Source: Octopus sinensis
Taxonomy: Eukaryota
Length of the DNA stretch: 64,000 nt
Reading direction: 5' to 3'
Assembly (NCBI RefSeq): GCF_006345805.1
Contig: NC_043001.1
Span: forward strand, 112,778,001-112,842,000
Part shown: positions 3,334-3,635 of the stretch, in pieces
Position numbering within the stretch: the stretch's first letter is position 1
Layout of the letters: every line of letters starts with the position of its first letter
Notes under the pieces: model-generated
The model's input: only the letters and a program-made list of their open reading frames with translations
Database searches by the model: none
What the model was told of the DNA's origin: nothing
Program-made: the position numbers and the translations under genes

Positions 3334-3453
3334 ATATACGGCCATATCACGTTGAAAGCACCGGTTCTTGTCTGATCACCGAAGTTAAGCAACGTCGAGC
3401 CTAGTCAGTACTTAGATGGGTGACCGCTTGGGAAATCTAGGTGCAGTAAGCAT
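3334..3453 (+). rRNA. 5S: 5S rRNA full-length copy (probably retroposed, or the head of a chimeric element)
   Basis: TACGGCCATATCACGTTGAAAGCACCGGTTCTTGTCTGATCACCGAAGTTAAGCAACGTCGAGCCTAGTCAGTACTTAGATGGGTGACCGCTTGGGAAATCTAGGTGCAGTAAGCAT aligns by eye end to end with metazoan 5S rRNA (box A, intermediate element and box C positions). No oligo-T terminator follows. Confidence 0.9.
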
Positions 3454-3464
3454 AGCAGAATGTT

Positions 3465-3635
3465 ACTACACTCGCGGAGTGGTTGGCGTTAGGAAAGGCA
3501 TCCAGCCGTAGAAACACTGCCAGATAAGACTGGAGCCTGGTGCAGCCTCTGGCTTCCCAGACCCCGGTCGAACCGTCCAACCCGTGCTAGCGCGGAAAGC
3601 GGACGTTAAATGATGATGATGATGATGATGATGAT
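3465..3635 (+). mobile_element. Family D retroposon 3' tail with (GAT)n, fused to the 5S copy
   Basis: ACTACACTCGCGGAGTGGTTGGCGTTAGGAAAGGCATCCAG...GGACGTTAAA(TGA)n matches the tails at 13469, 48191, 60063 and 62252. Confidence 0.85.

What the first reader, a model, noticed from the sequence alone, without database searches (positions are those of the whole stretch)
3334..3635. Full-length 5S rRNA fused to a retroposon tail: candidate 5S-derived SINE or chimeric retrocopy
Seen: a complete ~120-nt 5S sequence, an 11-nt linker (AGCAGAATGTT), then the family D tail and (GAT)n. The tail starts almost exactly at the boundary between D's monomer array and its unique tail. There is no oligo-T after the 5S; the first T-run is ~40 bp past the tail. 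Established: 5S carries an internal type 1 Pol III promoter; 5S-headed SINEs (SINE3) and small-RNA/LINE template-switch chimeras are known in other animals. Inference: Pol III could read through 5S into an RT-recognised tail, giving an otherwise headless family a promoter. Box C reads TAGATGGG rather than TGGATGGG, so this copy may be weakened. I saw no TSD. Whether such an element is described in cephalopods is unknown to me.
Basis: partly seen in the sequence, partly recalled or inferred. Interest (0 to 1): 0.75.

Follow-up and report, generated by a model that had tools for sequence, protein, structure and literature searches.

The report
5S rRNA copy fused to SINE tail
A complete 5S ribosomal RNA sequence sits head-to-tail on the LINE-recognised end of a common octopod short repeat, most likely pasted in as one retrocopy; it is a known kind of event, and these tools could not show whether it founded a repeat family.

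Summary
Rfam finds one full-length 5S rRNA at 3334-3452 (96.6 bits, E 1e-19). A 12-nt spacer follows, then 145 nt that are 88-94% identical to four "family D" copies in the window, then (GAT)n to 3635. The D part starts within 1 nt of where D's monomer homology ends. No T4 run occurs before 3677, and there is no target-site duplication.

I read this as one retroposition event. The 5S part has neither a terminator nor a 3' tail of its own, and it shares strand with a tail carrying the hairpin plus (GAT)n also found on a LINE-like fragment in the window.

Whether it belongs to an amplified 5S-headed SINE family or is a one-off template-switch chimera could not be tested. The junction is single-copy in 64 kb, and no searchable collection held cephalopod DNA with these repeats. 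I lean slightly to a family, only because meeting a one-off in a random 64-kb window is unlikely.

It is a new member of a known kind (SINE3-like element or small-RNA chimeric retrocopy), of moderate interest.

The parts
3334..3452 (+). Full-length 5S rRNA-derived head. Box A region is about 3383-3397, the intermediate element 3400-3405 and box C 3413-3430 (Xenopus numbering, from memory). Helices II-V are fully paired; helix I has 3 of 9 pairs broken; the first 3 nt merge into an AT microsatellite.
   Evidence: Rfam RF00001, 96.6 bits, E 9.6e-20, model 1-120; non-canonical marks only in helix I; pair table.
3453..3464 (+). Spacer TAGCAGAATGTT of unknown origin. It ends in TT exactly at the junction. 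Proposed, but untested: the 3' trailer of a 5S precursor that stopped in the first U's of its terminator.
   Evidence: Read directly. No significant match to the window's SINE families.
3465..3609 (+). D-family unique 3' module, 5'-truncated exactly where monomer homology ends. It has 2 CpG-type and 3 other substitutions plus 1 gap against a CpG-restored consensus, about 4% divergence. It keeps 12 CpGs, the most of any D copy in the window.
   Evidence: Alignments A1 and blastn; divergence and CpG counts.
3574..3605 (+). Conserved two-step hairpin just before the microsatellite. It is shared by D copies and by a LINE-like 3' fragment, and is the presumed recognition element for the reverse transcriptase.
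   Evidence: RNAalifold on 8 tails: 10 pairs, 3 with compensatory changes on both sides.
3610..3635 (+). (GAT)n / (ATG)n terminal microsatellite, 8.7 units; the priming end for target-primed reverse transcription.
   Evidence: Tandem Repeats Finder. The same repeat ends all D copies and the LINE-like fragment at 41178-41440.
3677..3681 (+). First T run (TTTTT) downstream, in flanking DNA. A Pol III transcript started at the 5S head would end here, giving about 345 nt.
   Evidence: T-run scan.

Best explanation
The 302-bp block is one retroposed composite element. The reverse transcriptase of the LINE that mobilises family D primed on the (GAT)n-plus-hairpin end and copied the D module up to the base of D's monomer segment. 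The cDNA then continued, through a 12-nt spacer, into a complete 5S sequence. The junction most likely arose when the enzyme jumped from a D RNA to a 3'-extended 5S transcript. That product has a 5S internal Pol III promoter, no terminator, and a LINE-recognised tail, which is everything a SINE needs. I lean to the view that the window copy is a daughter of such a 5S-headed master, that is, a member of a 5S-derived SINE lineage, rather than the unique product of the jump itself. Shown: the anatomy, the missing terminator, the shared LINE-type tail, and the structural integrity of the 5S part. Inferred: a single insertion event, the template jump, the trailer origin of the spacer, and above all the existence of further copies.
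For: The 5S is full length and on the same strand, 12 nt from the D module. The 5S part has no T-run terminator and no A-rich or microsatellite tail of its own, so alone it is neither a normal gene nor a self-sufficient retrocopy. The D tail shares its last 58 nt (79% identity), a covarying hairpin and (GAT)n with a LINE-like fragment that ends an ORF (...CGTCQRECLSRIGLHSHSRKC*) at 41178-41440. Chance adjacency is unlikely: 8 D-type 3' ends in 64 kb give roughly 1e-3 for one starting within 15 nt of a given point on the same strand (inference). The tail is among the least decayed D copies, at about 4% divergence with 12 of 14 CpGs kept. The 5S keeps all pairs of helices II-V, including compensated ones, so both halves look similarly young. 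For a family rather than a one-off, there are two points. First, a sampling argument (inference): independent 5S chimeras should number tens per genome, making a hit in a random 64-kb window improbable, whereas a family of thousands of copies makes it likely. Second, the giant squid genome paper reports about 24,000 5S-derived loci 'likely to be SINEs' (PMC6962438), and 5S-headed SINEs have arisen repeatedly (PMC10886601).
Against: The junction occurs only once in the window and there is no second 5S. No target-site duplication flanks the block. This is weak evidence, because the five D copies tested as controls also lack one. A paralogous 'empty site' (2493-2616 against 3637-3771) starts exactly at the end of (GAT)n, but its extension across the insertion point is not significant (p about 0.06). 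The spacer's origin is unexplained. No external copy could be sought, because protein-word searches, exact-product look-ups and DNA pattern scans all came back empty for lack of cephalopod data.
Confidence: 0.45

Rival explanations
1. One-off bipartite chimeric retrocopy. In this very insertion event the LINE reverse transcriptase switched template from a D SINE RNA to a 5S rRNA precursor. No master and no family exist.
For: The anatomy is the same as for the best explanation. The 5S part looks taken straight from a functional 5S RNA: helices II-V are intact and the pairs are compensated. The spacer ends in TT, as a terminated precursor would. The junction is single-copy in the window. Small Pol III RNAs are the preferred acceptors in known chimeric retrogenes (Buzdin 2003, as cited in PMC4758252).
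Against: It is rare a priori: meeting one of a few tens of such events in a random 64-kb window is unlikely (inference). A random switch point would fall within 1-2 nt of the monomer/module boundary only about 1-2% of the time, unless a hairpin stalls the enzyme there. A 12-nt filler is long for a direct jump. A product with a promoter and a working tail would be expected to amplify.
Confidence: 0.33
2. Two independent insertions. A solitary 5S pseudogene was already present, and a 5'-truncated D copy later landed 12 nt downstream of it by chance.
For: The neighbourhood is a patchwork of repeats. An OR1/CORE-like SINE sits about 10 nt upstream of the 5S with its own 11-nt duplication ATATATATACA, and another repeat starts right after (GAT)n. 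D copies with other 5' truncation points exist, for example 33714-33788. No duplication brackets the whole block.
Against: It needs a 5S copy that arrived without any 3' tail or terminator. It needs the same strand and a 12-nt gap, roughly 1e-3 by D density. It also needs truncation exactly at the module boundary, seen in none of the 5 other copies. No duplication flanks the tail alone: CAGAATGT against CAGATGTA lies 8 nt off and is not significant.
Confidence: 0.12
3. A resident, dispersed 5S gene (orphon) whose terminator region was hit by a D insertion. In that case the locus could itself be the master of a future SINE.
For: The Rfam score is as high as for genuine genes. With the tail removed, the sequence reads ...GAATGTT|TCCCC, a remnant T3.
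Against: Three of nine helix I pairs are broken, and the first three nucleotides are ATA rather than G-C/T-C/T. It is not in a 5S array, and the copy lies between repeats. T3 is not a usual Pol III terminator.
Confidence: 0.05

Closest known systems
SINE3 (5S rRNA-derived SINEs: zebrafish SINE3, Kapitonov & Jurka 2003; lepidopteran HaSE3 and SINE3-1_* families, PMC10886601)
   Same: A 5S-derived head carrying box A, the intermediate element and box C; no terminator after the head; a 3' part recognised by a partner LINE and ending in a short tandem repeat; total length about 300 bp.
   Different: Those are families with hundreds to thousands of copies and diverged heads. Here one copy is seen, and the head is a complete, structurally intact 5S. 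The tail is borrowed from another SINE family (D) rather than shown to come directly from a LINE.
5S-plus-tRNA composite heads of some Deu-SINEs (AmnSINE1 and relatives, Nishihara 2006; described in PMC4824008 and PMC4758252)
   Same: A 5S sequence placed in front of a pre-existing SINE body, attributed to a template switch from SINE RNA to 5S rRNA, after which the 5S takes over as promoter.
   Different: There is no Deu domain here. The recipient is the octopod D family, and no evidence yet shows that the 5S took over promoter function or that the product amplified.
Bipartite chimeric retrogenes (U6-L1, 5S-L1 and others; Buzdin et al. 2002/2003)
   Same: A full-length small Pol III RNA copy fused in the same orientation to a 5'-truncated retroelement that ends in its normal 3' tail.
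   Different: Those are made by L1, end in poly(A), have direct junctions and are flanked by 10-20 bp duplications. Here the tail is hairpin plus (GAT)n, a 12-nt spacer is present and no duplication is found.
About 24,000 5S-derived loci in the giant squid genome (PMC6962438)
   Same: A cephalopod genome with a large excess of dispersed 5S-like sequences, suspected to be SINEs.
   Different: That report is a copy count only, from a decapodiform. No structure, tail or junction was described, so homology with this element is unknown.

Membership tests
SINE, 5S-derived (SINEBase definition, PMC3531059) | Short (<1 kb), interspersed, not tandem | tested here: met
   302 bp; single and non-tandem in the window.
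SINE, 5S-derived (SINEBase definition, PMC3531059) | At least 60% identity to 5S rRNA over at least 60 nt | tested here: met
   Rfam model 1-120, 96.6 bits.
SINE, 5S-derived (SINEBase definition, PMC3531059) | [quoted passage not shown] | tested here: inconclusive
   One copy in 64 kb. All attempts to reach other cephalopod DNA failed. 20 kb of Argonauta hians held neither 5S nor D.
SINE, 5S-derived (SINEBase definition, PMC3531059) | Extra body and tail beyond the RNA gene, with the tail shared with a partner LINE | tested here: met
   D module plus hairpin plus (GAT)n. The last 58 nt are 79% identical to a LINE-like 3' fragment at 41384-41441.
SINE, 5S-derived (SINEBase definition, PMC3531059) | Transcribed by Pol III from the internal promoter through the tail | not testable with these tools
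   At sequence level the boxes are present and no T4 occurs before 3677. Activity needs RNA data or in vitro transcription.
Template-switch chimeric retrocopy | Two parts from different RNAs, same orientation, with the 5' part a full-length small Pol III RNA | tested here: met
   5S model positions 1-120, followed on the same strand by the D module.
Template-switch chimeric retrocopy | The 3' part is a 5'-truncated retroelement ending in its normal 3' tail | tested here: met
   The tail lacks the monomer segment present in all 5 other copies and ends in (GAT)n.
Template-switch chimeric retrocopy | One target-site duplication flanking the whole chimera | tested here: inconclusive
   No significant duplication, but D copies used as controls also lack one, so absence says little.
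Family D SINE (as defined in this window) | Monomer segment GGTGGCACGTAAAAAGCACC... in front of the module | tested here: not met
   It is replaced by 5S plus spacer. The element is therefore not an ordinary D copy.
Functional 5S rRNA gene | T-run terminator directly after the 3' end, intact helix I, usually in an array | tested here: not met
   No T4 before 3677; 3 of 9 helix I pairs broken; solitary.

The most novel reading that the evidence does not exclude
Octopods carry a so far undescribed, recently active 5S-headed SINE family. It would have been born when a 3'-extended 5S precursor was joined to the LINE-recognised module of the abundant D SINE. This would be the first characterised 5S-derived SINE in molluscs. 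It would also give a concrete structure to the unexplained excess of 5S-like loci reported in a cephalopod genome.
Probability: 0.4. Interest if true: 0.5.

Novelty: new member of a known kind. Interest (0 to 1): 0.35.

Why it matters
If further copies share this junction, the element records the birth of a SINE by promoter capture. An intact 5S head would have been grafted onto a tail that an active LINE already recognises, in a clade where only tRNA-derived SINEs have been described. It could be dated and traced across octopod genomes. If it is a one-off, it is simply another example of reverse-transcriptase template switching, made here by a LINE with a hairpin-plus-microsatellite tail rather than a poly(A) tail like L1's. 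Either way it should not be annotated as a 5S rRNA gene.

Tried and rejected
1. External copies through proteins. ORFs next to or inside the element were looked up by exact product and none is on record. Junction-spanning translations were searched in the 5.8-billion-protein set and no candidates appeared.

2. External copies through DNA. The D core and a composite 5S-gap-tail pattern were scanned in viral, metagenome and prokaryote-genome contigs, with zero hits. These collections hold none of these repeats, so the negatives say nothing about copy number.

3. The last protein search used an abundant window SINE ORF, to reach any octopod genome. It returned one Argonauta hians protein. Its 20-kb locus has no 5S and no D, which is uninformative.

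4. D monomers as decayed 5S. The match CACGTAAAAAGCACC against 5S CACGTTGAAAGCACC looked tempting, but local alignment scores are within the shuffle range for most copies, so the idea was rejected.

5. The spacer as a piece of the OR1-like SINE head (GGCAGAAATGTTAGCA). The match is not significant.

6. Target-site duplications under three models (whole block, tail only, upstream SINE removed). None was significant.

7. A paralogous empty site from the local duplicate at 2405-2616. The downstream half matches well (81%), but the upstream half does not (p about 0.06), so it is only suggestive.

8. MFE folding of the 5S part has z = -0.2 and is uninformative; the covariance-model hit is the relevant evidence.

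9. ARAGORN and the Rfam tRNA model found no tRNA-like head in D. The box A-like TCGCGGAGTGG and box B-like GGTCGAACC in the module are only near-matches, so they were not used.

10. Literature. No paper in the library describes a 5S-headed SINE in octopus. The squid 5S paper (PMC326244) and the octopus genome paper (PMC4795812) are not held.

Full report
**What is there**

Rfam's 5S_rRNA model matches window 3334-3452 on the + strand over its whole length (model 1-120, 96.6 bits against a gathering score of 38, E 9.6e-20). It is the only 5S-like sequence in the 64 kb, even at E<=1.

After a 12-nt spacer (3453-3464, TAGCAGAATGTT) comes 3465-3609. The element ends in 8.7 units of (GAT)n at 3610-3635.

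In every other full D copy, the word ACTACAC that opens our tail is preceded by one to four monomers of 62-68 nt, each starting GGTGGCACGTAAAAAGCACC. Our copy therefore begins within 1 nt of the point where monomer homology stops.

No T4 run occurs before TTTTT at 3677-3681. The 37-nt junction is unique in the window.

**State of the two halves**

In the covariance-model alignment, non-canonical pairs are marked only in helix I. There, 3 of 9 pairs are broken, two of them through the first three nucleotides (ATA), which merge with an upstream AT microsatellite.

Helices II-V are fully paired.

It is matched by U95, the same pair as in my recollection of Drosophila 5S. It therefore looks like a natural variant of a working 5S, not a lesion in box C.

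The tail differs from a CpG-restored D consensus by 2 CpG-type and 3 other substitutions and one gap in 148 nt. It retains 12 CpGs, the most of any D copy here. Both halves thus look moderately young. A strict age comparison needs the species' own 5S gene, which I could not obtain.

**The tail is a LINE-type tail**

The last 60 nt or so of D form a two-step hairpin (3574-3605 in our copy) followed by (GAT)n. Across eight tails in the window, 3 of its 10 pairs show compensatory changes.

The same hairpin and microsatellite end a fragment at 41178-41440. This fragment carries the end of an open reading frame (...LRYICGTCQRECLSRIGLHSHSRKCIRT*) and a 3' UTR of about 165 nt. It looks like the 3' end of the partner LINE; I could not name its clade. 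A 75-nt 5'-truncated D tail at 33714-33788 shows that truncated copies occur.

**One event or two**

The 5S part has no terminator and no tail of its own, so by itself it is neither a normal gene nor a retrocopy that a tail-specific LINE could have inserted. It lies on the same strand, 12 nt from a tail that such a LINE does recognise.

With 8 D-type 3' ends in 64 kb, the chance that one starts within 15 nt downstream of a given point on the same strand is about 1e-3. None of the other five copies is cut at the module boundary. I therefore take a single retroposition event as most likely, at about 0.8.

The evidence is not airtight:
- No target-site duplication flanks the block or the tail alone, although D copies used as controls also lack one.
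- The OR1/CORE-like SINE at 3092-3324, by contrast, has a clear 11-nt duplication, which shows it landed separately just upstream.
- A local duplicate (2493-2616 against 3637-3771, 81%) begins exactly where (GAT)n ends, but its extension across the insertion point is not significant.
- The neighbourhood is dense with repeats, so chance adjacency cannot be dismissed (about 0.12-0.17 including the orphon variant).

**Mechanism**

Target-primed reverse transcription started on the (GAT)n-plus-hairpin end and copied the D module. At the base of D's monomer segment, where GGTGGC...GCACC can form a small hairpin, the cDNA continued into 5S sequence.

There are two possibilities. The template may already have been a single Pol III transcript from a 5S-headed master. 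Alternatively, the enzyme may have jumped from D RNA to a 5S RNA in this event.

The spacer ends in TT right at the junction. I propose it is the 3' trailer of a 5S precursor that stopped in the first U's of its terminator. This is an inference. It can be tested against the 3' flank of the genuine 5S genes, predicted to read AGCAGAATGTTTT. The spacer has no significant match to the window's SINEs.

**Family or one-off**

This is the key open question, and these tools could not answer it. No searchable collection contained these cephalopod repeats. The one octopod locus I could reach, 20 kb of Argonauta hians, has neither 5S nor D.

My slight lean to a family (0.45 against 0.33) rests on three points:
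- A sampling argument: independent 5S chimeras should number tens per genome, so meeting one in a random 64-kb window is improbable, while a family of thousands makes it likely.
- The product has everything a SINE needs.
- The giant squid genome paper reports about 24,000 5S-derived loci 'likely to be SINEs' (PMC6962438).

SINEBase requires at least 100 copies before an element is called a SINE (PMC3531059). That criterion is untested here, so the element is a candidate only.

**Comparison with what is known**

It works like SINE3 (a 5S head plus a LINE-recognised tail). Its proposed origin matches that of the 5S-plus-tRNA composite heads of some Deu-SINEs (PMC4824008 and PMC4758252). It is built like the bipartite chimeric retrogenes of mammals. 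5S-headed SINEs are known to have arisen independently many times (PMC10886601).

I found no description of one in octopus. The element is not an ordinary D copy, since it has no monomer segment. It is not a functional 5S gene either: it has no terminator, helix I is damaged and it is solitary.

**Verdict**

This is a real, well-delimited composite retrocopy of a known kind. The novelty is modest unless a genome-wide search shows a family.

Noticed in passing
window 3092-3324 (+), and at least 10 further copies (e.g. 8591-8822, 57388-57619, 25375-25603-): An abundant tRNA-type SINE with a CORE-like middle. From memory it resembles the octopus OR1/OR2 families. Copies have clear 9-13 nt target-site duplications. 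The copy beside the 5S has ATATATATACA, so it inserted separately into the AT-rich stretch 5 nt upstream of the 5S.
   Followed up: partly
window 41178-41440 (+): A LINE-like 3' fragment: the end of an ORF (...CGTCQRECLSRIGLHSHSRKCIRT*), a UTR of about 165 nt, then the same hairpin and (GAT)n as family D. It is flanked by a 17-26 nt direct repeat, TTTTAAT(G/A)GTTTCAGTA, shared with the 3' flank of the D-like copy at 40930-41145. It is probably the partner LINE of D.
   Followed up: partly
window 33714-33788 (+): A 75-nt 5'-truncated D tail. It shares with the 5S-linked tail the variants AAAGCGG and AAATG, which three monomer-bearing copies lack. This is too little to define a subfamily.
   Followed up: no
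window 13470-13625, 48180-48290, 60235-60420(-), 62424-62690(-): Family D heads are arrays of 1-4 monomers of 62-68 nt. The monomer looks like a shortened version of the first 100 nt or so of the unique module. A 15-nt resemblance to 5S (CACGTAAAAAGCACC) is not significant.
   Followed up: yes
window 2405-2700 and 3637-3771: A local duplicate: 2493-2616 matches 3637-3771 at 81%. A 60-nt segment is also repeated at 2405-2465 and 2640-2700. This may be a small tandem or segmental duplication or an unclassified repeat.
   Followed up: partly
window 4196-5651: An (AC)n microsatellite of about 1.45 kb (736 units, 76% matches), giving a spurious 616-aa ORF.
   Followed up: no
window 15030-15440(-), 28129-28515, 51580-51996, 61885-62364: A third SINE family whose antisense strand keeps a long ORF ([41 protein letters not shown]...). 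The only database relative is a 'hypothetical protein' of Argonauta hians. This points to an octopod source and to a SINE-derived gene model in that annotation.
   Followed up: partly
window 26214-26348, 45394-45560, 51456-51696, 42132-42450 and others: Dozens of sub-threshold Rfam 'microRNA' matches (mir-466, mir-297, mir-3149 and others) all lie on TA/TG/CA microsatellites and are artefacts.
   Followed up: no
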